A stretch of DNA of 64,000 nucleotides from Gracilinanus agilis. Its lineage: Eukaryota. Where the stretch lies: assembly GCF_016433145.1 (NCBI RefSeq), contig NC_058133.1:485857547-485921546 (forward strand), read 5' to 3'. The notes beneath the pieces are model-generated. The model ran no database searches. It was given only the letters and a program-made list of their open reading frames with translations, and had not been told where the DNA came from. A program made the translations under genes and the position numbers. Positions 9,529 to 55,180 of this stretch are shown in pieces; position 1 is the first letter of the stretch, and the number at the start of each line of letters is the position of its first letter.

Positions 9529-11499
9529 CACTTTAACCTTGAATTTTCTTTAAAACTGGGTATATTTATATTATGCCAGGAGCAACTGTTTTTAGGGCAA
9601 GATCCTAAACTACAAAGATAGGCAGCCTTTATGATTGAGACTAAAGAGAGAACTTTAGCTGACATGGGAAAACCATTATGATCGTAAGTATCTCATCAGG
9701 ATTCTAGTTTATGAACTAGAGAAATGTGAAACTTTGGTTTTTAGGTTTATATGACCCCCCTTTCCTCTAACAAAATCCTCCAGGGTCTCAATGGCAGACA
9801 AAACGCCCCAGCTTCTTGAAGGCTATGCATGAGCTCACAGAGTCCCCCCAAAATTGGTCCAGCATTGAATTCAAGCCAGGCACTGTGACTGTGTGTGACT
9901 GATCATGCAGTCATAGTAGTAACTGGGACTGGTCATATCAGTGTAGCCCCTGGTTAGGCGGGGCAGTGTGTGTGATTTTTTTTCTTTTTTTAGACACAAC
10001 AGCTCTACTAAGGGGTAGATGTCTGGGATCTTCATCAGTGAAAAGAGGATCCATACAGATGAAATACTGGATCCCTGAAGTGCTGGCCTTCCTCACCTGC
10101 CACTGGAGTTTACGAAGACATCATTTCTGAGACAGTCTGTTCTTCCTTAGTCTCACAGCCCAGGAAATAAAAAAAGTTTCCCCATGGGAAATACAATATC
10201 AGTTTTATGGTAGAACTATCTCAGGATCCTGTAGGACCAACAGTATAATAAAACTGTTCTCTTTTTTTTTTTTTTTTTTAAATGATGCCTCCAATGACCA
10301 GGTCACATATACCTGTTAAAGTAAAACCACAGGAATCTCTCCAGTCTTGGTTGGAGTCTATGATTATTTAAATGTGTCTAATAGGGAAGTTCCCAAGGCC
10401 CTTGAGCTCTTCAGATTGTAAGAGGGGAGTCCTGTTGGATTGAGTGATGGAGCTCTCTCCTTCCCCATCCCCCTTTTTAGCTGTGTGGCTCTCTGCTGTC
10501 TTGGGCACTCGTGAGTTAGGTTTAAAACACTTTAGGCATCTCACAAAACGGGACCACCTGTGGCAGGAAAAAAAGGTTTAGAATGAAAGTCCCTGAAGAA
10601 GTAGGAACTGTTCAGTATTCATGGCTGTAGAAAGGAGGCAGCTTAGGAACTGGCCCGGCCTGGGACCACATGCAACTTTCAGTTTCCAGAATGTAGAAGA
10701 GAAGTCACTGATCCAAACGAGGCTTTCTCTTTAAGTACGGCTTTGACTGTGTTGTCATCTGAATTGTCACTTTGTCCACAGAACTGGTCTGAGCTGTCCG
10801 TGGGCAAGAGCCAGCCAATAGAAACCTCTGAGGAGCTTATTTTTTTTTAATGGCACATAAATCAAGTGAGATCACATTTGGCAGAAAATTTAGCACTTGG
10901 GAAGGGAGAGTCTACTGCTTCAGAGTTATGCTTTTCTATTAAATCATTAGGAAAATGGTGCCAAAAGAACTTTCTTTCCCTCCCCCTTCTTGCCCCCCAA
11001 CAAGAGTGAATTAGGAATGACTGGAGTATGGAAACCACAGTAGTGATACTCTGGGGCATTATGCTAAAAGAGATGGTTTTGGGGTCTCTAGTTTGGGGTC
11101 TTCTGTGCTCATAGGGGCATGATGCAGAGGGGCTGCCAACTGCAGGTGTGTTTAGCCTTGGGCCAGATTCTGTGGTATAAAGGTCACCTGGGACCTGTAT
11201 GAGGTCTTCTTGAAGGAGGAAGCCAAGAACCTCTGCACTGAGATTCCTAAGATGACTGCATAAGTAAAGGAAGACGGGCATTCGAGGGAAGAGGAGTTGG
11301 GCATTTTACTTAACTAGAACCTTATGGGGGCTGTGATGGCCCAAAAAGCCAAGCCAGTCTTAGAATAGATTAATAGGCTGTAGTGAATCTACTCCAACAT
11401 TGGCTTGGCTCTTTTGGCCATCATATCCCCCTATAGCTCTGTTTGCAGAGGGGAGTGGCTATAGTAGGGAAGCCCGGATGATTAGAGAATAGGGCAGGA

Positions 11500-11780: not shown

Positions 11781-12312
11781 TCTCTAGTTGTAAGACTGGA
11801 GATGATCCAGGAAGAAGACCTTGAGGGAATTTAGAGACAATAAGAGTTAAGAATACACTCGCAGGAATTTGTTTTGCTAGTGTGTGATATTTTCAGTGGC
11901 ATTTTTAGAAACTCTGCAGTCATATCATATACTATATTGTTCAAATGTTTGCTTGTATATGTTGTCTAATTTTTAAAACTTCTTTCCCTTCCTTAGGCAT
12001 GTTTACTTTTCTTTGCAATAGCTTTTAAAAGAACGTAGAACTCTGGGCAATATTAAAGAATTCATTTTCATTGTCCCCGGGTTTATGATGACTTGTGTTC
12101 TGGCCCCAACACTTCAATTTAAAATCCATTCCCTGAAGTGAGTAACAATTGTTTGGCTTTGAAATCTTAGTTAATGGGAAAAGGCGAACTCCTTTTCAAG
12201 TTCAGACTCTGCGTCTTTTGACCCGGGTGTTTATCCTGTCAGAAACTGATTTTACTCGGTAGATATTTAAACAATGACCTGCTTAAATACTTGACATTCT
12301 TCTCTTTCTCAG

Positions 12313-15300
12313 CCATCTCTTCCTGTACTATATACACTGTCTAGCCAAGCAACACATGAAGCTGTTCATCTCCTTTGCAGGATGTTGGTCTTTGATCCAG
12401 TAAGTAATGTTGGATTGCTGGGGGGTTTAAATAATATTTTAATTTTTTTTCCTTTTAAAAGACTCATCCTGGTTTGGCCAAGATGGCAGTTGTGGATTAT
12501 CCTTTTTTAAGCATCTGTTTCCAGCCCAGCAGGTATTTTGCCCACTGACCATACCAACACTGGGTCTTTCACAATGGTGCTGGTCTTTTACCAGTTCAGT
12601 TCCAGGGACTAAAGTAAAAAGTTAGGCACCGCATTACCTCTTGTCCCTCTCAGAAACCAAAACAAAATGTCTGACACCATCTTAGGTTTAATTAGAGACC
12701 TAAGAAAGGTCATTTGAAAAGACTCACCATCGTGTTGCATATCAGCGTTGTTTATCAGTTTGATGCTAGGAGAGCGCCTTCCTAAATGCTCTACCATTTC
12801 TAGACTTGTCCTTTATTTTAAATATATAAGCAAAACTTGTAATTTGTCATTTACTGGGTTGGCTTCTTAAATGCTGAAAAAATGTTTCTGAGGCCCCTCT
12901 TCCCCGTTATATCCTCTGAACTATAAAAACGGATGCATTTCTTCCCTTGCTAAGAGTGTTGTTATATTTAATATTGTGGCTTTTTCAGCCTCAAAGTAGC
13001 ATAAAGCCAAGGGCATACACTTAGCTTCTACAAAATGCCTCCATTGCTTTGAAGCAGCCAAGAAGGGCCTTCAAAATGAACATCAAAAACGTTCTGTCGA
13101 CGTGGAATCTAGAGACCCCAAACTTGTGGCTTAGTGAGATCTGATGAACCCCAAGTTTTAGAAATAGCTTGTACTTTGGAGACCCCCAAAGCTTGTGCTT
13201 GTTCCCTGTTCCCTTGAGAATCCACCCTGAAGGGAATCTCAGGCTAGCAGTTGCAGACTGAATAATGGACCCCAGGGTAAAAGCTAAGTGATTCTTTTGC
13301 CTTAGAAGCTTCTCCCATAGTACCACATTCCCCTTCAAGGGATCAAACTCGGGACCTTCAGCTTACATGACTGACAGGCTTCTGACTGCGCCAAAGAGTC
13401 ACTTAGCTTTTACCCTGGGGTCCATTATTCAGTCTGCAACTGCTAGCCTGAGATTCCCTTCAGGGTGGATTCTCACGGGAACAGGGAACAAGCACAAGCT
13501 TTGGGGTCTCCAACCTACAAGCTATTTCTAAAAGTTGGGGTTCATCAGCTCTCACTAATCCACAAGTTTGGGGTCTTTAGATTCCACGTCGACAGTTCCT
13601 TAGAAAGCCTTCTCCCACCCCCTGGTGCCATACTTGGGATACGTTGGGAGTGGTGGCCCAATATTGAAAATGAAAGGATTCCATTTAGTCAAATGCATTG
13701 TCATTTTTGGCAACGACATCCATGAGAGATAAGATTTTTCCTATCCTGAGAATATAAATTCAAGGAGGTACCATGTGGGCAGCTGGGTAGCTCAGTGGAT
13801 TGAGAGTCAGGTCTAGAGATGGGAGGTCCTAGGTTCAAATCTGGCTTCAGACACTTTCCAGCTGTGTGACCCTGGGCAAGTCACTGGACCCCCATTGTCC
13901 ACTCTTACCGCTCTTCCACCTAGGAGCCAATACACAGAAATTAAGGGTTTAAAAAAAAAGAAAGTACCATGGCAGCAAGGGAGGCGAGCCCTGCTTCTCT
14001 TCCTTCCAAGTCAGGGGCTCCCCCTAGTGGTGTGCCTTGCACGTGTCCATTCAGATTTTGCCTCTTACCTGACGTCGATCATTCAGTGAGAGAAGACAGT
14101 CGTGTGTGCAGAGCAGACGCTGACCCTCGCGCCCTTCTCTCCCATTTTCAGTCCAAAAGAATATCTGCTAAGGACGCCTTAGCCCACCCCTACCTGGATG
14201 AAGGGCGGCTGCGATACCACACCTGTATGTGTAAATGTTGTTTTTCCACCTCCACTGGAAGAGTTTATACCAGTGACTTTGAACCCGTCACCAACCCCAA
14301 ATTTGATGACACTTTTGAGAAGAATCTCAGTTCTGTTCGACAGGTAAAAGGTGAGTCGTGAGGTGCACGTTCCATTCTGTAGCCCAGTGCGAGGGCCGGG
14401 CCCCAAGCAGAGCAGCGCTTTGTGCCACAACGCTATAAAGGTTAACTGGGCACCTCCAGGGCAGGGAAACGGGCTAAAAAACGTTGGAGGCGGCACTCAT
14501 TTTCTAGCATGACTTCCTGTGGCAGTGGCTCAAGTCATCCTAGTGAAATCTGGGCCCGCTCAATTGAACTGAATAGACAAATCTTATTGAATACTCTTAG
14601 CATGAAAAGCACAGACAATAAAAAATATATATACTCATGTGATTAGGAAAGGAGAGAGGAGAAATTTCTAATATAAATCCTCCATGTAATTCCCTAACCT
14701 GGGGAGAGAGGTAAGTCGGCCACCAGAATACTGATCTCCTTGTTGCTAAAAGGGGCAGCCCTTAAGATGACTGGATTCTGGGAGCAGCTGGGTGGCTCAG
14801 AGGATTGAGAGCCAGGCCTAGAGACAGGAGGTCCTAGGTTCAAATATGACCTCAGACACTTCCCAGCTGTGTGACCCTGGGCAAGTCACTTGACCCCCAT
14901 TGCCTACCCTTACTGCTCTTCTGCCTTGGAGCCAATACACAGTATTGATTATAAGATGGAAGATAAGGGCTTAAAAAAAAAAAACTGGATTCCAAGCCAT
15001 GTAGATTAAAAACGTGAAGTTATACTTGGAACAGTTCGATATCCAGCCGAGATGAAGAAATCTGGATATGTCAGGGAATCAGCTAGTAATTTAGATTTGG
15101 CCTGACGCACCATGCCAGCTGGATCTTTAAAGTGATATTCAGAGCCACAGGAAGAGTTTACCCACAAGGCATCTCCTTGCAGCGTCCTCCCAAGTTTGGA
15201 GACAGCTCACCTCCCTTCCGTGCCAGTGTTCTCAGTCACTGCGGTGCTTATCAGATGGGCCCCAGAGAAGCAGCAGGATTCTCCCTCTTAGATGACTGGC

Positions 15301-16911
15301 AATTCTCACTGAAGCTGTACGAAGCATGGCTTCGGCTTTGGCTTGGCTGCAGCCAAGAATCCCAAGCTTCTGTGAACTGGCAGAGATTATGTGATCTGTG
15401 TTTGCTCCACAGAAATTATTCATCAGTTCATTTTGGAACAGCAGAAAGGAAACCGAGTGCCTCTCTGCATCAACCCTCAGTCTGCTGCTTTTAAGAGCTT
15501 CATTAGGTATGTGGGCCTCGTTTCTTTTATTCCTAGTGATAGCTGGGCCTTTAGTTGGAATTAAAGATGCTTTTGTGATGCAAAGTTATCTTAGCTACCT
15601 CTCACTTAATTTGGATCAAGGGTAAGAATGTTTTTTTGAATGAGTAACCAAAACATTTATTAAAAACTTTGCATTTAACCAAAATTTTAGTTCTCACTGC
15701 TATCTTCACACTTAGCTTCAGCTCAGAATTAGATAACTGCACTGTATAGTTCTCCAAGATGGAAAGTGAGCTCCATACACTGCGTGTCACAGAAGCCTTA
15801 GTGCAGTTTGACGCTGTTAAAGGCTGGAAACACATGATGTCTCCATACTTCGCTTTGCTAACGATAGGTCAAAGAAAACTTTCCCCCCACTGCTAAAATA
15901 GCAGTTCTATTCAAATAACATTTTGAAGCCCAGCCCAAAGCCCACAAGAATTCACTGAGCAAAGTATGGTTCTAAAGTCTCTCTTCTCTCTCTAGCTCTC
16001 CTCTTCCTATCTCTGGGTCTCTGATAAATGTATCTGCTTCTCCTGTTTCCTCTACTTATCTCTTCCCACCATCCAAGTGAATTCACTGAGCAAAGTAGAT
16101 GGCAAGAATAAGCTTAGCTCCAAGGGTCTCTCTTCTCTCCGATAAATTCATCTCATTTCCTCTACTTACCTCTTCACATCATCCTCTTTTAACTGGGCCC
16201 AAAATATATCCATTATATTTATTGAGTAAACATTTTATTTTCAACCCCATAAATTTTTAAATGTCTTTTTAGACCAAAAAAAAATCCAAAGCGAAGTTAT
16301 TTTTACTTCCAGATCTTTGAACAAGGTTCTGTGAGAGAAACTAAATCTAAGACTCCATCTCTGGTTTTAAGGAGGTAACAGAATACACACAAAAAATACC
16401 AGTTCAGGGCAGGAGACAAGCAAGTTACACATAGAATAAATAATTGGCTCTCTTGCTCATCTGGCCTTTGGAAAAAGAAACCTGCCCACGCTTTCACCTT
16501 GGGTTAGGCTGATCAAGCCAGGAAACATTTCAAAGCCTGACATATAAATTGTGAAGATCAGGTTTTAAATTTACCTTTTCTGAATCTTAGAAGGCTACAT
16601 CTTCTGTGCCCAACCCCCGACCACCCCAATTAGTTTTAGATTCTTGAAATGCACCTTTCTGATAAATATAACTTTAAAGATGACCACAAGAACAGCAAAG
16701 AAATTGAAAACCAGAACGGTGTCTTGCGTTTTTGTTGTTTTTAAGGAAGAGGGTAAAAGAAGGGCCTGGAAAGGGAGGGAAGAAGAAAATATTTCCAGAT
16801 TGGCAGTGCTGATTTTTGCTCGGCTGATCGTGTCCCCTTTGTTTTGCTTTATTTAGTTCCACTGTTGCCCAGCCATCTGAGATGCCGCCATCTCCACTGG
16901 TCTGGGAGTGA
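12313..16911 (+). CDS. NLK: Nemo-like kinase, C-terminal coding exons (5' exons lie upstream of the window)
   Basis: Exons 12313-12399 (PSLPVLYTLSSQATHEAVHLLCRMLVFDP), 14152-14350 (SKRISAKDALAHPY...SSVRQVK), 15413-15506 (EIIHQF...KSFI), 16857-16911 (SSTVAQPSEMPPSPLVWE*). All AG/GT; 435 nt in frame. Confidence 0.98.
13094..13595. repeat. Long inverted repeat (arms 13094-13300 and 13390-13595, 89-bp spacer)
   Basis: Manual alignment of the left arm with the reverse complement of the right arm gives ~10 differences in ~207 bp. Confidence 0.97.
13328..13400 (-). pseudogene. tRNA pseudogene derived from elongator tRNA-Met
   Basis: GACTCTTTGGCGCAGTCAGAAGCCTGTCAGTCATGTAAGCTGAAGGTCCCGAGTTTGATCCCTTGAAGGGGAA aligns ungapped at ~52/73 nt to vertebrate tRNA-Met(CAT) as recalled. 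TTC->TTT in the T-loop, broken acceptor and T stems, no T-run terminator. Confidence 0.75.
13776..13960 (+). mobile_element. Opossum-type SINE (short-tail variant)
   Basis: SINE head and B-box; TSD gtaccatg. Confidence 0.9.
14779..14983 (+). mobile_element. Opossum-type SINE (long-tail variant)
   Basis: SINE head and tail; TSD actggattc. Confidence 0.9.
15830..16210. mobile_element. Probable decayed ERV LTR with internal tandem duplication
   Basis: CT-rich LTR-like composition ending in ttttaactggg; gaattcactgagcaaagta occurs twice ~131 bp apart. Confidence 0.35.
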
Positions 16912-16955: not shown

Positions 16956-17135
16956 NNNNNNNNNNNNNNNNNNNNNNNNNNNNNNNNNNNNNNNNNNNNN
17001 NNNNNNNNNNNNNNNNNNNNNNNNNNNNNNNNNNNNNNNNNNNNNNNNNNNNNNNNNNNNNNNNNNNNNNNNNNNNNNNNNNNNNNNNNNNNNNNNNNNN
17101 NNNNNNNNNNNNNNNNNNNNNNNNNNNNNNNNNNN
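16956..17135. other. Assembly gap (180 N)
   Basis: Direct reading. Confidence 1.
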
Positions 17136-18216: not shown

Positions 18217-18365
18217 NNNNNNNNNNNNNNNNNNNNNNNNNNNNNNNNNNNNNNNNNNNNNNNNNNNNNNNNNNNNNNNNNNNNNNNNNNNNNNNNNNNN
18301 NNNNNNNNNNNNNNNNNNNNNNNNNNNNNNNNNNNNNNNNNNNNNNNNNNNNNNNNNNNNNNNNN
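18217..18365. other. Assembly gap (149 N)
   Basis: Direct reading. Confidence 1.
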
Positions 18366-19370: not shown

Positions 19371-20989
19371 GGCTGGTCATAAACAATTCCAGGTGGACCG
19401 ATCTGCTTATCATACTAAAGGTTCTGGTACCTTATCATTGTTTAAATCAAGAGCCTGAGTGAATGAACAGGTTAGATAAAGAACCCAACAGGATTCGAGG
19501 GAACTACTTGGAGCCAGTGAGCAGTGAAGTCTTTGCTAGTCTAACCTGAACGATTTTTTTTTTTAATTCTAGAAAGACATAAAATCATTGGTATTTATTA
19601 ACCTCTCATTGCTATACAAGTTGTGATCCACTTTTTAGATTAGGAAACACTCAAATGGCTTGCCTATCATCATATATAGTATTGAAGCTGGAATTGAACC
19701 CCTAAACCAGTTCCTTAGAAGCCCCCACTTGAGTACCCTTTATTTAGCACCACAGTCCTTTCTTGAAGATAAAAATCCTAATTGCTGAGGATCTCTTCTG
19801 GTTCTAAAGCCTTCTCCCACTTAATTGTAAGGGCTAACAAAAATTCTTGGGAGCATGTGTTTGCATGTGAGTGTTGGCTCTAGGTGCATTAAACTCCCAT
19901 GGACCTGGTTTTTTGCTAAAGGGTAGATTCTTTCTTCTTCAATTACTAGTATCTCAAATGAGGGAACTGGCTGCCGTCCTCCATAAGATGGTAACTACAC
20001 CCCTCCAGACCCTCAAGTACACTTCCCTTTGGCCATCTTTCTGCCATGCGGTGCTCAGTACCCTCCCAGGAGGAGCTGTGCCACTTGGCTTTGGAGTCTG
20101 TGCCCTGATGCCATGTCCTGGTTGCCAAGACACCCCTCCCTACCGATATATCTAGTCTGCCAACCTGAGTATACTTCATCCCAGCCACCCCCTTCTTGCT
20201 CTGGGAATGGCACTTATGTCAACATTCCCATTGCTTCCAGATAGGACATATCAATCAACTGTGCTTTACTCACCATCCCAGACTATAATAAAACTCCTTT
20301 CCTAGGCACAATTCCCCTCCCTGTATTATCCCCTCTTAAAATTTAAAAGAGCTCCTGGAAGACAAACTTAACACAATGATAATCACTTAACAAGTGCTTA
20401 ATAAGTGATGTTTTGTTTAATTCTTTCATAGCACTCGTTACCCTTACTCTTTTGGGCAAAATGTTTGCCTGGAACTACAAAAACAAAATCATTCTTGCTT
20501 TCAAGAAGCTTTCATCCTATGAGAGATACGTATTCATGGATAAATAAGGGAGATGCCCAAATAAGTTCACTGTGGTTTGGTCTGGGAGGAGGTGACTAAT
20601 AAGGAAGGGCAATCAAGAGAGGCCAAGAGTCAGGTGTAAAGTCATGGAGGCAGGAGATGGTATGTCATGTGCAAGGGCCAACTAGTAGATCAGTTTTGAT
20701 GGAGACAGAGTGGAAGTAATCCTATAAAGACAAGCTAGTACCAGATAGCATTTTAAGTGCAAGTTTGGGTTTTATTCTAGAGATAACGGGGATCTTTTTG
20801 AGCAGGGGAGTGAGATCATCAAACCTTGGGGCTTTGGGGGCCAGCCTTCTAATTTAATTGGTCTAGGAAATTCCCAATGAGAAAACACTTTCTACCAATG
20901 TAAATCTGCAGATCAGCATCTGCTCTGAGTACCCAGGATTACACAGGATTCATCAAGAGTGTAATGCCTGCTCTTCACAACAAATGTTT

Positions 20990-24870: not shown

Positions 24871-25869
24871 AGCTAAGTTATTATAAGAAAGAACTTTCTA
24901 ACAATTAAGTTACCCAAAAACAGAATCTATGAATAGAGGTAGTGGGTTTCCCATTTGAAAAGGACCATTAATCAGGAATGTTGAAAGATTATGAGGTTGG
25001 ACTATAACCATTGAGGTTCATGCCAACTCAGTATTTGTACATCTTGGTGTGAATTTAAGTCAATGTGTTCCATCTCCCACAGAGTATTTGCATTCTAAGT
25101 CTTATCTTTAATTGCAAAGTAATGGTTTTTGGACCCAGTTAAAAGAATATACAAATAGCCCTTAGGGAAAGAAAGTGTTGGGTAAGAGGGGTGGAGAAAG
25201 CCAGAAGAGGAGAGTGACTTCCAAGAAGCAACTTCTGTCATACCTCTAGGAAAAAGATGGTTGGTATTCAACTTGGATCATGTTAAATACTACTTAGGTA
25301 AACAACTATATGGACAATGGCCACTGGACTGCAGTCTGTGACAAATTACAATGGTGTAGATTCCCCCCACCCACCCCCCAGTATTTTTTTAAAGGGTGAA
25401 ATTTTACTAAAATGAAAATCAAGGATAGTCTTGAGATGTCACAAAAGGACAATATATAGACTGTTTGTGTGTGATGTGATGTGATGTGATGATGATGTGT
25501 GTGGGGAGAGAAATGAAAGGCACCCTTGCTTGCCAGACTACCCCAGTTCTCTTCACCCTACCAATTCCACTTCAAGACCAGCCAAATGAACGACCTCCGT
25601 TTTTAAAGACCTGCTGCACCTCCGCAACTCAATGCCTCAACAGTAATTATAACACGTATATAAGGCTTTGGTGCTTTCCTCACAATAATAATACCGCACT
25701 TAAATTGAACTTCGGTGTTTTCCTCACAAGTTTGGGGTAGTTAACTCAAGTTACATGCTCCCAAGGCCGCCACCACCCCAAAACAATTTAAATGAACATT
25801 ATTAAACGACTTGAAAAGCGCTTCAAGGGCAAAGCCCTGGTGCTTACAATCTAAGGAGGAGCTCTAATG

Positions 25870-27100: not shown

Positions 27101-30100
27101 GTTCACTGGCCATTGCCCACTGGCCTCCCAGGCTGTCCTGTGGAAGAGTCAGCACCTCCCAGGTTCCTGAACTGACCCCCCCCCCATTCCCTAGGCACCC
27201 GAAAAGCCCATCTTCTGGAACAGAAACTCTGTGGCCCACTTTTTGCCAGTGTCCCTTCGTCCCTTCTTGGATTCAGTTTCACCTTTAGGCCAAGACCTGA
27301 AACCTAACTCCCCCAGATCCCCTGCCCTGCCTGCCTCCCTCCAGCCCTCCATGCTTCCCTTCCACCCCAGTTGGTCTCTGAATTCCATCTTCTTCTGTCA
27401 AACCTCTCCGAAGTCCTTCCCAGTTTGACTTCTCCTCGGGGACCTGGCCCTCCATGGTGATCTCGTGAGGACGCCTGGCCATAAAGGAGAATCCGTAGGG
27501 CAGGTGCATGGGACCTGCCTGCTGCCCAGGCTGGGGAGGGAAATGTTTAGCCAGAGGACCCAGAGCTAGTAAGTCAGCATCAAGACAGGATTTGAACCTA
27601 GTTGTCCCGTCTTCAAAACAAATGTCCATCCTTTGTAACACTTTGGTTTTGTTAATCTGGGGAAGCCTAAGGACCCCTTCTAAGAATAATAGTTTAAAAT
27701 CATTGAAAGAAATGGTAAATTTCAGTGAGAGGTTATGACGCTAAAAATGGGGGAGGGGAAGCTCGAGGCGGGAGGGGTCCCATCAGTTCACAACCCCTTC
27801 AGAATCCCACTTTAAGAACCCCAATATTAGGGTCTCAAAGGGACTCTCAACATCAAATTTCAGTGAATAGCTGAATAAGCCCACAACCTCTTTTCTCAAA
27901 TAGCTATTAAAGTCCGAGATTCAAGCCCCTCTTATGCTTTCCATGTGCTGTGCTAAACGCCAGGGACCCAAAGGCAAAAGCAAAACCATCTTTGCCCTTA
28001 GGGATTTTATATTCTAATGGGGGAACCAACTTGCATATATATAAAAATAGGTATAGAACATACAAAATTAGTACAAGCTGGTTTACTGGGGGAAGGAAGG
28101 CAGTATCTAAGCTGAACCGGCTGGATCAGGAACCCCTTTTTTTGTAACCTAGTTTTTTTAATTTTTTTTTAAACCCTTCCCTTCTGTCTTAGAATTGATA
28201 CTATGTATTGGTTCCAAGGCAGATGAGCAGTAAAAGTTAGGCAGTGGAGGTGACTTGCCCCGGGTCACACAGCTAGGAAAGGTCTGATGCCACATTTGAA
28301 CCCAAGACCTCCCAAATCTGGGCCTAGCTCTCAAAAAACTGAGAGCCTACCTGCCCCAGTTTACCTTAATTTTCAAAAGTAATATTTCAGGAGAGAAGTA
28401 GTTAAAATTGTGCTGTGAATTTAAATTGGATTAATTTAAGATCATTTCTAGTCAAATTGTATCCAACTGCAATCCTAAAATTAGCAATTTTAGGATTGCA
28501 ATGTTTGTCCTGGCAGTACTTTCCCTTGAGTTGATTTCCTTACTTTCCAAGCAGGTCTATACTTATCCAACTTGTTCCTCATCTTTCAATTTGAAAAAAA
28601 TTCTTTTGCACCAGACTGGTGATTTCAACAGTATAGGAAGATAGGAGGACATTCCACCTACCAGTCTGTTGCAGTTTATTGTCTCCAAATTGTCTAGGGC
28701 ACAGAGAGTACATTTGTTGCCCATGACTGTTCAGCCAGTGTGTGTTAGAGGTAAATTTCTTCCAGACTTGCAAGGCTAGCTTTCCAACAAAGATATTTCC
28801 CAAAAATTAACAGGGAGAATATCCTTGGATTTCATAGAATACTAAACTTATTTCAAGCTGGTTCTGTTTCCTGTAAATGGTGTTGATGTTTTTTCAAACA
28901 CTCATGAGGTTTACTGGGGCAGTTTCCCTGACTCCTACCCTTAAACTTCTCTAGTTCAGATCTTTGGGATCTTTTTTAAAAAGACAAGTTTGTGGGGCAG
29001 CTGGGTAGCTCAATGGAATGAGAGTCAGGCCTAGAGACGGGAGGTCCTAGGTTCAAATTTGACCTCAGACACTTCTCAGCTGTGTGTGATCCTGGGCAAG
29101 TCACTTGACCCCCACTGCCCACCCTTACCACTCTTCTGCCTTGGAGCCAATACACAGTATTGACTCCAAGACAGAAGGTAAAGGTTTAAAAAAAAATAAA
29201 AAGACAAGTTTGTTGCTTTCACTCTCCAACCCAAGTAGCTATGTGTACCCTTCTCCCTCATTCAGTGCACTAATGGTAAAGTCTAGAATACCATCTGATT
29301 CCCATCCCTTTCCACATCCTAAACTGATTTTTGTGGCCAAAAGAAGAGCTTATTTTTTTCTAATGCAAGCCTATACCTGACCTTTCGAGGAAATGAAATA
29401 TAATTTAGGGGAAGAGAGACCTTGAGATACTGGAAGAATGTTAGGTCTTGGAACTGCTACAATGGGCAGTTGGGGGCATCATAGCAGTTTAATGGGGTTT
29501 TTTTCTTCAAAGAAATGGCAGCTTAGGACCAGCTTCACAGTGGGATAGTCAATACCTTGTGGAGGTTACTTCAGATGTGAGATCTCTGCACCATTGATTT
29601 TATTTTATAATGTTATAAATTTTTATTATAAATTTGCCAATCATACACAAACATTCCAATAGTCAGAGAATAAGAGAATTGTTTTTGGAAACAATTAAGT
29701 ATATCTTGTATCTTAAAAACATTAAAGTTAACAAGGATGTAACAAAATTGCTGTTTGTGACCCCCTTCTGAACTTTTTTGTGTTTATTGGTTGGGTGTTT
29801 TGGTTTTTTTTGTTTTTTTTTTTTTAGATTAAAAAAAGTTTTACTGATACTCTTTTCCTGCAAGTTTAAGAATTGCAGGTGATCAGGATCTAAAGAATCC
29901 ATCACCACTTCTGTAAGGCTGAGTAATTGCCCATATTAATATCATTTTATTCATATACATTGCAAAAAGTCATTCTTGCTCAGCCGAAGAACAGTTCTAT
30001 AAGTTCTGTATGTGCACAGCACCAGTGAAAGTACAAAGAAGCCTACTTGGAAAGCCAGGTAAAAAAAAATTAGGAAGGTTGCCTGGTGAACAGTTAAAGG

Positions 30101-52564: not shown

Positions 52565-55180
52565 CAGTGCCTCTCAGTCTTGGGATCCAGACAGCCCAGG
52601 TTCCCCCCCTCTGGGGTGCACCCAAACCAGCATCACTTGTTGGGCAAGTGTCTGTATTTGCCTCTGCCCCACCCCTCTCCAGAGGCTAAGGGGAGCAGGG
52701 TAGGGAAGGACTTTTGTCCTGCTTCTCTGCTCTGCCCAAGGTGACTGAATCTTGCCCATCAATGGCATAACTAAGCCTTTTTCCTCACCTGCCTGGTTCC
52801 CTGCTGGGATAACTCCAGGGTACTGTTCTTCAGTTCAGCCTTATAGCTCAGGGGATCAACCTCTCCAAATTCTCATTAAGAAGACCCTGAAGCTCTAGGC
52901 CTCGGTTCTTCCTTGTACTCTTTGAAGGGTCCTCTTGCCCTTCACAAGTTTGGGGCACTGTTTTAGGGCCTCTTTCTGAGATACAGTAGGAGCTGAGAAT
53001 TCAGTTCTAGGGATGGAGAGGCCCTAGGCAGTCCTCTAGGAAATTTCTAATCACCAGTGATAAGCAGCAGCTTTTTTTTTTTTATAAGGAAGAGGATATT
53101 TTAAATTCCATGACTGAGCCACCCCTTCAGAGCGGGGGATCTGAGGGAAGCTACCTCAACTCCCCTTGGTTCTCTTCGATCATTAATGTAGTTTCTTCAG
53201 AATATGTTCTATTCTTCTGCAAAGAGACTTCAGCCCTGATCCATCAACTTTTCACCAGAGGAAACAAGGTAATCTCCCCATGTTTTCCTTTTTCAACCAT
53301 TCTGCCTCTTTCCCCAGGACCCATTCCAGAGAAGCAAAGAAAAATCAGTCAGTTTCCTTCTTGGATGAAAAGAATGAAATGGTTGGTCTTGCTATAAAAA
53401 GGAACCAGAGTCCAGCTGCCAGGGCCCTGGGAAATTTAAGAAAAGGCCAAATTCTCAGGCTGGAACAGTGGTAGGTCCAGATGAAAAGAAACTTAGTTTC
53501 TGCCAGCACATAACCTCCACCAGGGAGTCCACTACCCTAGGGCTGGTTTCTACCTCTGCTTTTTTTAGCTCTTTCCCTTATGGGTGCACTCTCAACCACA
53601 CTTTTGGTGTGTTCTCTAAAGGACCATGAGGTGGTGGTGCCTGCATCTTGCCTGCAGTAGATGGTCACTTGGCCACACAAACAATATCCATACATGTTTA
53701 GTGGGCAAGCTTCTGAAAAAGGTAGCATGGTGGCTTCAAAAAGCAATGGCTCCTCTGGCCTTGGCAGAGCAATAATACAGAAGGGAAGGGCCCAAGCTCC
53801 CTTCTGCTGGATCACTTAGCTTATGGAATCTTCATTGTCAGGGGATGAGAATCAGACAGCTTCTCTTCTGGGCCACAGGCCTCCCTTAGTTTAGTTTAAT
53901 CTCCAGAAAAGGATCTTTTCAAAATTCTTTTCCAGAAGCCAGTGCCTCCTTCCTCCCCAGATGACTGTGGTTATCAAATCAGCTGATGCATCTCAGGCTC
54001 TTCCTGCCTCTATTCTTCTAATGGTGGCTTCTAGGAGCCCAAACTGGCCTTTGTTTCTTGGTTCATTCTCCTCTCAAAATCTTGAATGTAGCTCCAAGAC
54101 TCTTAGAATGGCACCTTAACAGCCACCTATTAATGTTCCCACCCTTCATCAAGGCAAGATAATTGTAAGTTCACCTTTCTTTGGTTAGGAAGTCAATTTG
54201 AGTGTGGTCTGACTTAAGGAGACCAACAGTTAACTCACTGTTACATCCTTCGGCATTCAAGGTGGAAACTCGGGCTGCTGTTACCTCTCTTTTGGCTTCT
54301 GTTCACTGTTCTAACCCCCTCAAAGTAGTCCTAGGCCACCTGCCAGGACAGGAAGAGATATGTGGGCTCATGGAATGTTATCACCCTTTTCTCTAACCTT
54401 TTTCCACACAGAAATGAAGACATGTTAGTAGGCGTTATCTTAAATTGCCCAGGCCGAGACTGTCTGAATTCTTGGTCTGTTGAGATGACCACTGCTGCTT
54501 TCACCAGAAACACTATATAGTTGGAGACTTTCCTTTAGAAAACACTAAGTCTGCAATCAAAAGTAGATATTTTTCAAGTGTTCACCAGGAAATCCTTAAG
54601 TCACTCATCTCTTAGCTGTGGGAACTTTTGACTTCAGCAGCCAGAGTAAATGAAAAATAGATCTGAGACAATCACTGCCTGACTGCAGAACCTGCCGCTA
54701 TGGCCCTTCCCCCAAACCCCAGTTCAACTCTAAGTGGCTTTGGTATTTGTTTAGTATAGCACTTTTGAAATGACTGTCCTACCTTTAAAATGCTGTTGTT
54801 CCTGTTGGTTTTTTTAAGTCAGAACTGGACAACCTTCCCCTGACATATACCAAGAGGTTAAATGAGGTTTGGGTGAGGCATGACAGAGGCTCAGAGCTGG
54901 TATTGCTATTTACTGCCCCCAGACCCTGTGCTTGAAACTTCAGGCCCCATTTTGGCAGTTTTGTTGGAAACCAACAGCCAAACAGTTGGAGATTATGCTT
55001 TGTACAATCAGGCTACTTCCTGATCCAAGGGAGGTCTAAGATTGATTTTCCCATCTCTGCCTCAAAGGTCAGGTAGGCCCTTGGCTGAAATGAGGGCCTC
55101 ATTCTTCTCACTAACCTTTTAAATGGCAATATTTCTTTCTCCCCGATTAGCACAGGCAATGGAAGCAAACACTAATTTTT

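What the first reader, a model, noticed from the sequence alone, without database searches (positions are those of the whole stretch)
13094..13595. ~500-bp fold-back wrapped around a tRNA gene in NLK intron 8
Seen: arms 13094-13300 and 13390-13595 differ at only ~10 of ~207 positions, including a ~75-bp perfect stretch. The arm consists of the 5' flank of a tRNA-like gene plus its first ~11 nt, so a truncated second tRNA head points at the full copy. The arms contain an internal repeat (gagacccc(c)aaa(g)cttgtg at ~13112 and ~13179). No convincing TSD or known TIR was found. Inference: a recent inverted duplication by template switching at a Pol III gene, which is an established fork-pausing site, or an undescribed palindromic mobile unit. 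In the NLK pre-mRNA it would form ~200 bp of dsRNA between exons 8 and 9, a potential ADAR or endo-siRNA substrate or splicing modulator, and a cruciform-prone DNA site.
Basis: partly seen in the sequence, partly recalled or inferred. Interest (0 to 1): 0.75.

Follow-up and report, generated by a model that had tools for sequence, protein, structure and literature searches.

The report
Fold-back mobile-element insert, NLK intron
A 500-base stretch in an intron of the opossum NLK kinase gene, made of two mirror-image 205-base arms around a decayed tRNA-like piece, most likely is a small non-coding jumping element that inserted here, not a working tRNA gene or a special feature of NLK.

Summary
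The inverted repeat is real: arms 13094-13300 and 13390-13595, 95% identical (9 substitutions, 1 indel, a 77-base perfect run), 89-base spacer. (1) Read as 13095-13594, the unit starts TGTCG and ends CGACA and is flanked by a perfect 4-base direct repeat, GTTC. That is the end and target-duplication signature of integrase-type (Ginger/LTR-like) insertion. (2) An 18-base stretch just inside the left arm copies, 18 of 20, the host DNA just outside the right end. The "tRNA gene" is only a relic: ARAGORN calls it only at a relaxed threshold, and Rfam gives no hit.

Best reading (about 0.45): a non-autonomous fold-back element, later patched in its loop with a short copy of neighbouring DNA. Main rival (about 0.3): an inverted duplication made in place.

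This scan has noted the same signature (TGT...ACA ends, 4-base duplication) on other DNA of this genome at least 13 times. One follow-up reported thousands of copies. I did not check those notes.

Copy number, assembly correctness and expression could not be tested. Interest is modest.

The parts
13091..13094 (.). left copy of the 4-bp direct repeat GTTC (candidate target-site duplication)
   Evidence: read directly; identical to 13595-13598
13095..13300 (+). left arm of the fold-back; outer end reads TGTCG
   Evidence: 95% identical to the reverse complement of the right arm
13112..13133 (+). subrepeat copy 1 in the left arm (mirror copy at 13556-13577 in the right arm)
   Evidence: local alignment to 13179-13201, 0 of 500 shuffles reach the score
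13179..13201 (+). subrepeat copy 2 in the left arm (mirror copy at 13489-13510 in the right arm)
13300..13317 (+). D1: 18-nt stretch at the left base of the loop that copies host DNA lying just right of the unit
   Evidence: matches D2 at 18 of 20 positions with two 1-nt gaps; 0 of 500 shuffles reach the score
13318..13327 (.). 10-nt linker between D1 and the tRNA-like relic
13328..13400 (-). decayed tRNA-like relic in the loop; its first 10-11 nt lie inside the right arm
   Evidence: ARAGORN at -ps85 only (Thr-like, TGT), weak D and T arms; not called at default settings or by Rfam
13390..13594 (-). right arm of the fold-back; outer end reads CGACA
13595..13598 (.). right copy of the 4-bp direct repeat GTTC
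13598..13617 (+). D2: host flank sequence that D1 copies
12400..14151 (+). NLK intron that holds the unit (exons at about 12310-12399 and 14152-14350)
   Evidence: NLK peptides recalled from memory are found in frame on the + strand; exon ends inferred from GT/AG and the reading frame

Best explanation
The unit 13095-13594 is one copy of a non-coding fold-back (MITE-like) mobile element.

Insertion (inferred from the sequence signature). It was inserted into the NLK intron by a DDE integrase or transposase that cuts the target with a 4-base stagger. This left the duplicated GTTC on both sides of ends that read TGTCG...CGACA. The two 205-base arms are its terminal inverted repeats. Each carries two copies of a roughly 22-base subrepeat, which may be protein-binding sites. 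The loop carries a decayed tRNA-like piece as cargo.

Loop patch (a second, inferred step). The loop later broke at its left base. It was rejoined by an end-joining reaction that copied 18 bases from the host DNA next to the right end (D1 from D2), starting at a 2-base match (CC).

Consequences. The element has no coding capacity and would depend on an enzyme made elsewhere. In NLK pre-mRNA it should form a roughly 205-bp duplex. I have no evidence that this affects the gene.
For: The fold-back is real and far beyond chance.

End signature. A perfect 4-bp direct repeat sits exactly at the arm ends, and the ends are TGTCG/CGACA. This matches the TGTNR termini, 4-bp duplications and 40-270-bp inverted repeats described for Ginger elements and Gypsy LTRs (PMC2836005). 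A 4-bp match at a fixed boundary has a chance of 1/256, and the TGT start a further 1/64, before allowing for the several signatures I looked at.

Other features. A subrepeat occurs twice per arm. D1/D2 is significant and lies within 1-3 nt of the inner end of the left arm and the outer end of the right arm. Short flank-templated inserts, mostly under 25 bp, are a documented scar of polymerase-theta end joining (PMC5068794). Palindrome centres are known break sites (PMC3300023, citing the centre-break mechanism).

Substitution pattern. The arms differ by 2 transitions and 7 transversions. That fits poorly with two identical copies decaying neutrally (P about 0.008-0.025). It is easier to accept if the arms were never identical.

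Leads only. 13 unchecked notes from this scan report TGT...ACA fold-backs with 4-bp duplications in the same genome. One follow-up reports thousands of copies.
Against: No second copy of the arm or loop is in the 64-kb window, and I could not measure copy number in the genome. Very small runs of the same organism hold only 13-15% of the sampled words of 12700-14000. The neighbouring SINE alone could account for that share, so the unit is probably not a high-copy young family.

The target GTTC fits neither Ginger1 (CCGG or CCGT/ACGG) nor Ginger2 (RTATAY) preferences. Mobile Ginger elements have not been reported in mammals in what I read.

D1/D2 needs a separate second event. The inner arm boundary coincides with nt 1-11 of the tRNA-like piece, where 2 of the 10 arm differences sit. 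That is what fold-back priming in place would predict. The flanks are unique in the window, so no empty site could be shown.
Confidence: 0.45

Rival explanations
1. The inverted duplication was made in place. One arm is older local sequence. A nascent DNA strand that ended at the 5' end of the tRNA-like piece folded back on an imperfectly complementary 11-nt site (13290-13300 against 13390-13400) and copied about 195 nt of its own strand. That strand could come from replication, break repair, or reverse transcription of a small RNA primed at a nick. In this reading D1/D2 (18-20 bp, or 22 bp with GTTC if the left arm is removed) is the target duplication or repair scar of the same event.
For: The innermost 11 nt of the arms match only 9 of 11, while the next 77 nt are perfect, as expected for a priming site followed by copied DNA. 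The switch point falls at nt 1 of the tRNA-like piece, as I numbered it by eye from the sequence and one base from the start of ARAGORN's relaxed call. The D1/D2 direct repeat brackets the tRNA-like piece plus the right arm like a long target duplication. Fold-back and template-switch inverted duplications are well documented (titles and abstracts of PMC10622511, PMC7954356 and PMC11724301). No other copy is in the window.
Against: It leaves the perfect GTTC repeat and the TGTCG/CGACA ends as coincidences, roughly 1e-3 to 1e-2 after allowing for choices. Continuing the fold-back copy past the arm would give GAAC, not GTTC. There is no A-rich tail or LINE-type nick site for a retroposition version. 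The 2:7 transition-to-transversion ratio is odd for arms that started identical. The tRNA identity of the centre is weak.
Confidence: 0.3
2. The unit was born as an aberrant cDNA of an LTR-type retroelement and was then inserted by that element's integrase. A plus-strand strong-stop DNA read on through the whole tRNA primer. It snapped back on its own short LTR through the 9-of-11 complementarity and ran off at the LTR's 5' end. The palindromic product, with two identical TGT ends, was integrated with a 4-bp duplication.
For: One story covers the TGT...ACA ends with a 4-bp duplication, a tRNA-like piece in antisense orientation after the left arm, the arm boundary at tRNA nt 1-11, and the exact common outer end of both arms (run-off). 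The stretch 13095-13327 begins TGT and ends ACA directly before the tRNA complement. Self-priming of strong-stop DNA is a known side reaction (title and abstract of PMC6088434).
Against: No complement of the CCA end lies at the junction. 233 nt is short for an LTR, and I saw no TATA or poly(A) signal. D1/D2 stays unexplained. The tRNA identity is weak. No related LTR element was identified in the window, and no precedent for integrating such a product was found.
Confidence: 0.1
3. Assembly artefact: a chimeric or fold-back read or a mis-join created the second arm.
For: Palindromes are a known artefact class. The assembly has gaps nearby (N runs at 16956-17135 and 18217-18365). I obtained no read-level check. 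The best run holds only 0.69 of the sampled words.
Against: The arms differ at 10 positions, there is a unique 89-nt spacer, and a clean 4-bp duplication flanks the unit. Artefactual fold-backs are normally perfect and have no duplication.
Confidence: 0.05

Closest known systems
Ginger1/Ginger2 cut-and-paste DNA transposons and their non-autonomous copies (PMC2836005)
   Same: Termini of the TGTNR type (here TGTCG), 4-bp target duplication, terminal inverted repeats within the reported 40-270 bp range (here about 205 bp).
   Different: The target GTTC fits neither the reported CCGG or CCGT/ACGG preference nor RTATAY. No transposase partner was identified. Mobile Ginger elements are not reported in mammals in that paper, only the domesticated Gin-1 gene. 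The copy number of this unit is unknown.
Fold-back MITE copies with TGT...ACA ends noted by this scan in the same genome (s1-153820 and others; unchecked AI notes)
   Same: The same end letters, the same 4-bp duplication, fold-back build, intronic or repeat-embedded sites.
   Different: Those are 115-400 bp with 35-101-bp arms. This one is 500 bp with 205-bp arms and a tRNA-like loop. I could not compare sequences, so a shared family is not shown.
Fold-back / template-switch inverted duplications at breaks or forks (PMC10622511, PMC7954356, PMC11724301)
   Same: Inverted copy next to its template, a spacer between the copies, and imperfect microhomology (9 of 11) at the inner junction.
   Different: Those events do not make a 4-bp direct repeat at the outer ends, nor ends reading TGT...ACA. 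Short-range events are usually tens of bases, not 200.
Polymerase-theta templated inserts at repaired breaks (PMC5068794)
   Same: D1 is an 18-nt direct copy of nearby DNA (298 bp away), starts at a 2-nt match, carries two 1-nt slips, and is within the usual size (under 25 bp).
   Different: Most templates reported there lie a few bases from the junction, not about 300 bp away. Here the distance is only short if the 205-bp arm on the other side of the break had been resected.
tRNA genes and tRNA-derived SINEs
   Same: The loop shows a tRNA-like order of A-box-like and B-box-like motifs (2 mismatches each) and a weak cloverleaf.
   Different: No call by ARAGORN at default settings or by Rfam. 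The tRNA-like piece is central and not at the 5' end of a retroposon. There is no LINE-type tail and no A-rich end.

Membership tests
Ginger-like / integrase-type DNA transposon (non-autonomous copy) | Termini follow TGTNR ... YNACA | tested here: met
   13095-13099 TGTCG and 13590-13594 CGACA; criterion from PMC2836005
Ginger-like / integrase-type DNA transposon (non-autonomous copy) | 4-bp target-site duplication | tested here: met
   GTTC at 13091-13094 and 13595-13598, 4 of 4. The C and G next to the ends could equally extend the inverted repeat by one pair, so the boundary is not unique.
Ginger-like / integrase-type DNA transposon (non-autonomous copy) | Terminal inverted repeats of about 40-270 bp | tested here: met
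   arms of about 205 bp, 95% identical
Ginger-like / integrase-type DNA transposon (non-autonomous copy) | Target preference CCGG or CCGT/ACGG (Ginger1) or RTATAY (Ginger2) | tested here: not met
   the target is GTTC within ...AACGTTCCTTAG...
Ginger-like / integrase-type DNA transposon (non-autonomous copy) | An autonomous partner with a Gypsy-integrase-like transposase and the same ends in the genome | not testable with these tools
   only this 64-kb window is readable, and no such gene lies next to the unit
MITE / fold-back element (generic) | Several copies with the same ends and different target duplications | not testable with these tools
MITE / fold-back element (generic) | Small, non-coding, with terminal inverted repeats and a target duplication | tested here: met
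   500 bp. The only long ORF (105 aa, minus strand) has no homologue in the word search.
Functional tRNA gene | Canonical cloverleaf recognised by tRNA finders or covariance models | tested here: not met
   ARAGORN default: 0 genes. Rfam: no tRNA hit at E<=10. Only a call at -ps85, with 3-pair D and T arms and A instead of U at position 33.
tRNA-derived SINE | tRNA-like head at the 5' end, a LINE-derived or A-rich tail, and a flanking target duplication of the retroposon | tested here: not met
   the tRNA-like piece is central, preceded by 205 nt; neither end has a tail. The 18-22-bp D1/D2 repeat brackets the relic plus one arm, but without a tail.
In-place fold-back / template-switch inverted duplication | Microhomology at the switch point, the copy adjacent to its template, and no target-site duplication | tested here: inconclusive
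   9-of-11 complementarity at the inner junction and adjacency are met. A perfect 4-bp direct repeat at the outer ends is not expected.

The most novel reading that the evidence does not exclude
The unit is a fossil of an aberrant reverse-transcription product. A short LTR plus a read-through copy of its whole tRNA primer snapped back on itself and was then integrated by a retroelement integrase. If the many TGT...ACA fold-backs with 4-bp duplications in this opossum genome arise the same way, LTR-element integrases would be producing a family of hairpin 'MITEs' from their own dead-end cDNAs. As far as I could find, that route to fold-back elements has not been described.
Probability: 0.1. Interest if true: 0.75.

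Novelty: new variant of a known kind. Interest (0 to 1): 0.35.

Why it matters
If the mobile-element reading holds, this is a large member, with unusually long arms and a tRNA-like cargo, of a class of fold-back elements with an integrase-type insertion signature. That class appears to have been active in one opossum lineage, and mobile elements with this signature have not been described in mammals in the papers I could read. It would point to a source of transposase or integrase activity worth identifying.

For NLK itself the likely meaning is small. Introns often carry inverted repeats, and the unit lies 695 nt from the upstream exon and 556 nt from the downstream exon. The locus is also a neat natural example of a long palindrome that seems to have been stabilised by an asymmetric patch in its centre.

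Tried and rejected
- **Reads.** I therefore have no read depth, no junction check and no RNA evidence.
- **Proxy for other copies.** A word search with the 105-aa ORF that spans the left arm gave no hits. This says little, because non-coding eukaryotic ORFs are rarely in that collection.
- **Extensions of the palindrome.**
  - The two halves of the spacer are not significantly complementary to each other (182 of 500 shuffles do as well).
  - The palindrome does not extend into the flanks (218 of 500).
- **Flank similarities.**
  - Homology between the loop and the right flank does not reach beyond D1/D2 in local alignment.
  - A 14-mer in the left flank (13018-13031) that resembles the inner arm end is borderline (5 of 500). 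I treated it as chance.
  - A third D-like site at 19803 is compatible with chance.
- **Empty site.** A reconstructed empty site finds no repeat copy spanning the junction in the window.
- **Other readings rejected.**
  - L1-type retroposition of the relic plus the right arm (22-bp direct repeat) was rejected, because there is no A-rich tail and no suitable nick site.
  - Other transposon signatures do not fit the flanks: TA, TTAA, and 8-bp duplications.
- **Papers.** No paper on marsupial fold-back elements was found.
- **Gene identity.** A search of solved structures with one exon gave nothing. The NLK identity therefore rests on peptides I recalled from memory and found in frame. I did not build or search a joined exon model.

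Full report
**Observation.**
- *Arms.* The sequence at 13094-13595 is a fold-back. Arms 13094-13300 and 13390-13595 are reverse complements of each other at 95.2% over 207 nt, with 89 nt between them. A base-by-base list gives 9 substitutions and one 1-nt indel. None of them falls in 13215-13291, a perfect run of 77 nt. Eight fall in the outer 120 nt and two in the innermost 9 nt. Seven of the nine substitutions are transversions.
- *Subrepeat.* Each arm holds two copies of a roughly 22-nt motif, at 13112-13133 and 13179-13201. No dinucleotide shuffle out of 500 reaches that alignment score.
- *Predicted fold.* As RNA the region folds into one long hairpin of -410 kcal/mol, against -150 for shuffles.
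- *Copies in the window.* Nothing else in the 64-kb window resembles the arm or the centre.

**The gene around it.** Peptides that I recall from human NLK are found in frame on the + strand: LYTLSS...LVFDP at 12328-12399, and RISAKDA...HPYLDEG...TNPKFDD...FEKNL at 14158-14328. A further exon lies near 15424-15477. The intron therefore runs from 12400 to 14151. The unit sits 695 nt from its start and 556 nt from its end. The gene identity rests on my memory of the protein, not on a database hit. One exon searched against solved structures gave nothing. I did not build or search a joined exon model. The exon number (intron 8) was not checked.

**The "tRNA gene".**
- ARAGORN with default settings finds no tRNA anywhere in the window.
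- Rfam gives no tRNA match at E<=10, either on 1.8 kb or on 125 nt centred on the loop.
- Only when ARAGORN is relaxed to 85% of its threshold does it draw a cloverleaf. It lies on the minus strand at 13328-13399, has three-pair D and T arms, and has anticodon TGT. At that setting ARAGORN makes 12 calls in this window.
- A-box-like (13383-13393) and B-box-like (13339-13349) motifs are present with two mismatches each and sensible spacing. Matches of that quality occur at chance frequency (300 found against 304 expected; 102 against 111).
- By eye the stretch resembles a vertebrate elongator tRNA-Met. That is my recollection, not a test.
- I call it a decayed tRNA-like relic.

- *Ends and target duplication.* If the unit is read as 13095-13594, it begins TGTCG and ends CGACA. 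It is flanked by a perfect 4-bp direct repeat, GTTC, at 13091-13094 and 13595-13598. The C at 13094 and the G at 13595 can be read either as one more pair of the palindrome or as part of this repeat.
- *D1 and D2.* The 18 nt at 13300-13317 (D1), which begin at the last base of the left arm, match the 20 nt at 13598-13617 (D2), which begin at the last base of the right GTTC. The match is 18 of 20 with two single-base gaps, in direct orientation. No shuffle out of 500 reaches that score.
- *An equivalent reading.* Taken together, these facts can be read another way. If the left arm is removed, a 22-24-nt direct repeat brackets the linker, the relic and the right arm. Both readings imply the same empty site, in which the left flank runs through a single GTTC straight into D2.

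**What does not extend.**
- The two halves of the spacer are not significantly complementary to each other.
- The palindrome does not run into the flanks.
- Similarity between the loop and the right flank stops after D1/D2 in local alignments.
- The flanks are unique in the window, so no other repeat copy shows the uninterrupted site.

**Best explanation.**
- *The insertion signature.* TGTNR ends, a 4-bp duplication and inverted repeats of 40-270 bp are the structural signature reported for Ginger DNA transposons, which share it with Gypsy LTR ends (PMC2836005). A 4-bp repeat at a fixed boundary (1/256) combined with a TGT end (1/64) is unlikely by chance, even after allowing for the handful of signatures I considered.
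- *Other support.* Subrepeats inside long inverted ends are also usual for transposon ends. The excess of transversions between the arms (P about 0.008-0.025 against a neutral spectrum) is easier to accept if the arms were never identical.
- *What I propose.* I therefore favour a non-autonomous fold-back element inserted by an integrase-type enzyme, with the relic as loop cargo.
- *Explaining D1.* D1 then needs a second event. I propose a break at the left base of the loop, repaired by end joining that copied 18 nt from the other side of the break, beyond the resected right arm, starting at the shared CC. Flank-templated inserts, mostly under 25 bp, are a documented scar of polymerase theta (PMC5068794). 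Centre breaks of palindromes are a known route to stabilised, asymmetric centres (PMC3300023, which cites the centre-break mechanism).
- *Status.* Both steps are inferred. Neither is shown.

**What this scan noted before.** Thirteen notes on other DNA of the same genome describe fold-backs with TGT...ACA ends, most with a 4-bp duplication, of 115-400 bp. One follow-up states that one such family has thousands of copies and is absent from two related species. Another follow-up could not prove a family. These are unchecked AI notes. I could not compare sequences, so I use them only as a reason to think such an insertion activity existed in this lineage.

**Main rival.**
- *The model.* The inverted duplication may have been made in place. 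A nascent strand that ended at the 5' end of the relic would fold back on the 9-of-11 complementary site at 13290-13300 and copy about 195 nt.
- *For it.* The innermost 11 nt are the least similar part next to a perfect 77-nt run. The switch point coincides with nt 1 of the relic. D1/D2 would be the scar or target duplication of the same event.
- *Against it.* The GTTC repeat and the TGT/ACA ends become coincidences. Copying on past the arm would give GAAC, not GTTC. There is also no tail or nick-site signature for a retroposition version.

**Further rivals.** A hybrid reading is an aberrant LTR-element cDNA that read through its tRNA primer, snapped back and was then integrated. It would join the tRNA-like centre with the integrase signature. 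It lacks a CCA-complement junction and any identified LTR family, and it leaves D1/D2 unexplained. I give it about 0.1 and list it as the novel case. An assembly artefact is unlikely, given the 10 arm differences, the unique spacer and the clean duplication, but it is not excluded by reads.

**Limits.**
- The run search found one good holder (0.69 of the sampled words) and no RNA holder. Tiny runs of the same organism hold only 13-15% of the words. The neighbouring SINE alone could explain that share, which hints that the unit is not a high-copy young family.
- Copy number, the orthologous site, polymorphism and expression therefore all remain open.

**Consequences for the host.** The predicted roughly 205-bp intronic duplex would be a good substrate for RNA editing, but intronic inverted repeats are common and I have no RNA data. 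With an 89-nt spacer, hairpin or cruciform formation in DNA should be much reduced. PMC3300023 reports stalling for 320-bp inverted Alu repeats with 0- or 12-bp spacers but not with a 52-bp spacer.

**Verdict.** The structure is real and tidy, and most likely a fold-back mobile-element insert with an integrase-type signature and a patched loop. It is not a tRNA gene and not evidently functional. Interest is modest (0.35). It would rise if the family and its enzyme were identified.

Noticed in passing
window 11326-11431: A second, unrelated small fold-back: 46-nt arms (83% complementary), a 14-nt loop, ends GGGGGCTGTG.../...CCCCC, flanked by TAT/TAT(A). It looks like a different MITE type (TA or TWA duplication).
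   Followed up: partly
window 13773 to about 13990 (+): A marsupial tRNA-derived SINE copy lies directly downstream of the unit in the same intron. It probably accounts for the roughly 10% word share seen in runs of other organisms.
   Followed up: no
window 25725-25737 (-) and 52943-52955 (-): The 13-mer CCCCAAACTTGTG from the arm's subrepeat occurs exactly at two more places in the window (about 0.002 expected under uniform composition), but the surrounding sequence does not align with the arm. Unexplained; it may be a motif of an old repeat.
   Followed up: partly
window 13623-13640 (+): Just after D2 and a run of five C, the host flank reads like a primer-binding-site-type complement of a tRNA 3' end (it begins TGGTGCC). 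Anchored to D1/D2, the next 12 nt match the loop at 8 of 12, and all four mismatches are transitions. This is borderline (roughly P 0.04 before the transition argument) and not significant in local alignment.
   Followed up: partly
window 13094-13595: The arm differences are 2 transitions, 7 transversions and 1 indel, an unusual spectrum for neutral decay. No model explains it well.
   Followed up: partly
window 28156-28233 / 29125-29202: 78-nt inverted repeat, 85% complementary, 891 nt apart; probably two oppositely oriented copies of an interspersed repeat.
   Followed up: no
window 19798-19820 (+): A third D-like site (GTTC...AAAGCCTTCTCCCAC) shares an exact 15-mer with D2. It is compatible with chance in the pattern test.
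   Followed up: partly
window 16956-17135 and 18217-18365: Two N runs (180 and 149 bases). They are assembly gaps or masked stretches, and I left them as they are.
   Followed up: no
window 13977-14005 (+): A short G+C-rich hairpin scores E=0.017 against the togavirus frameshift element model, well below its gathering score (26 against 40 bits). I take it as chance.
   Followed up: no
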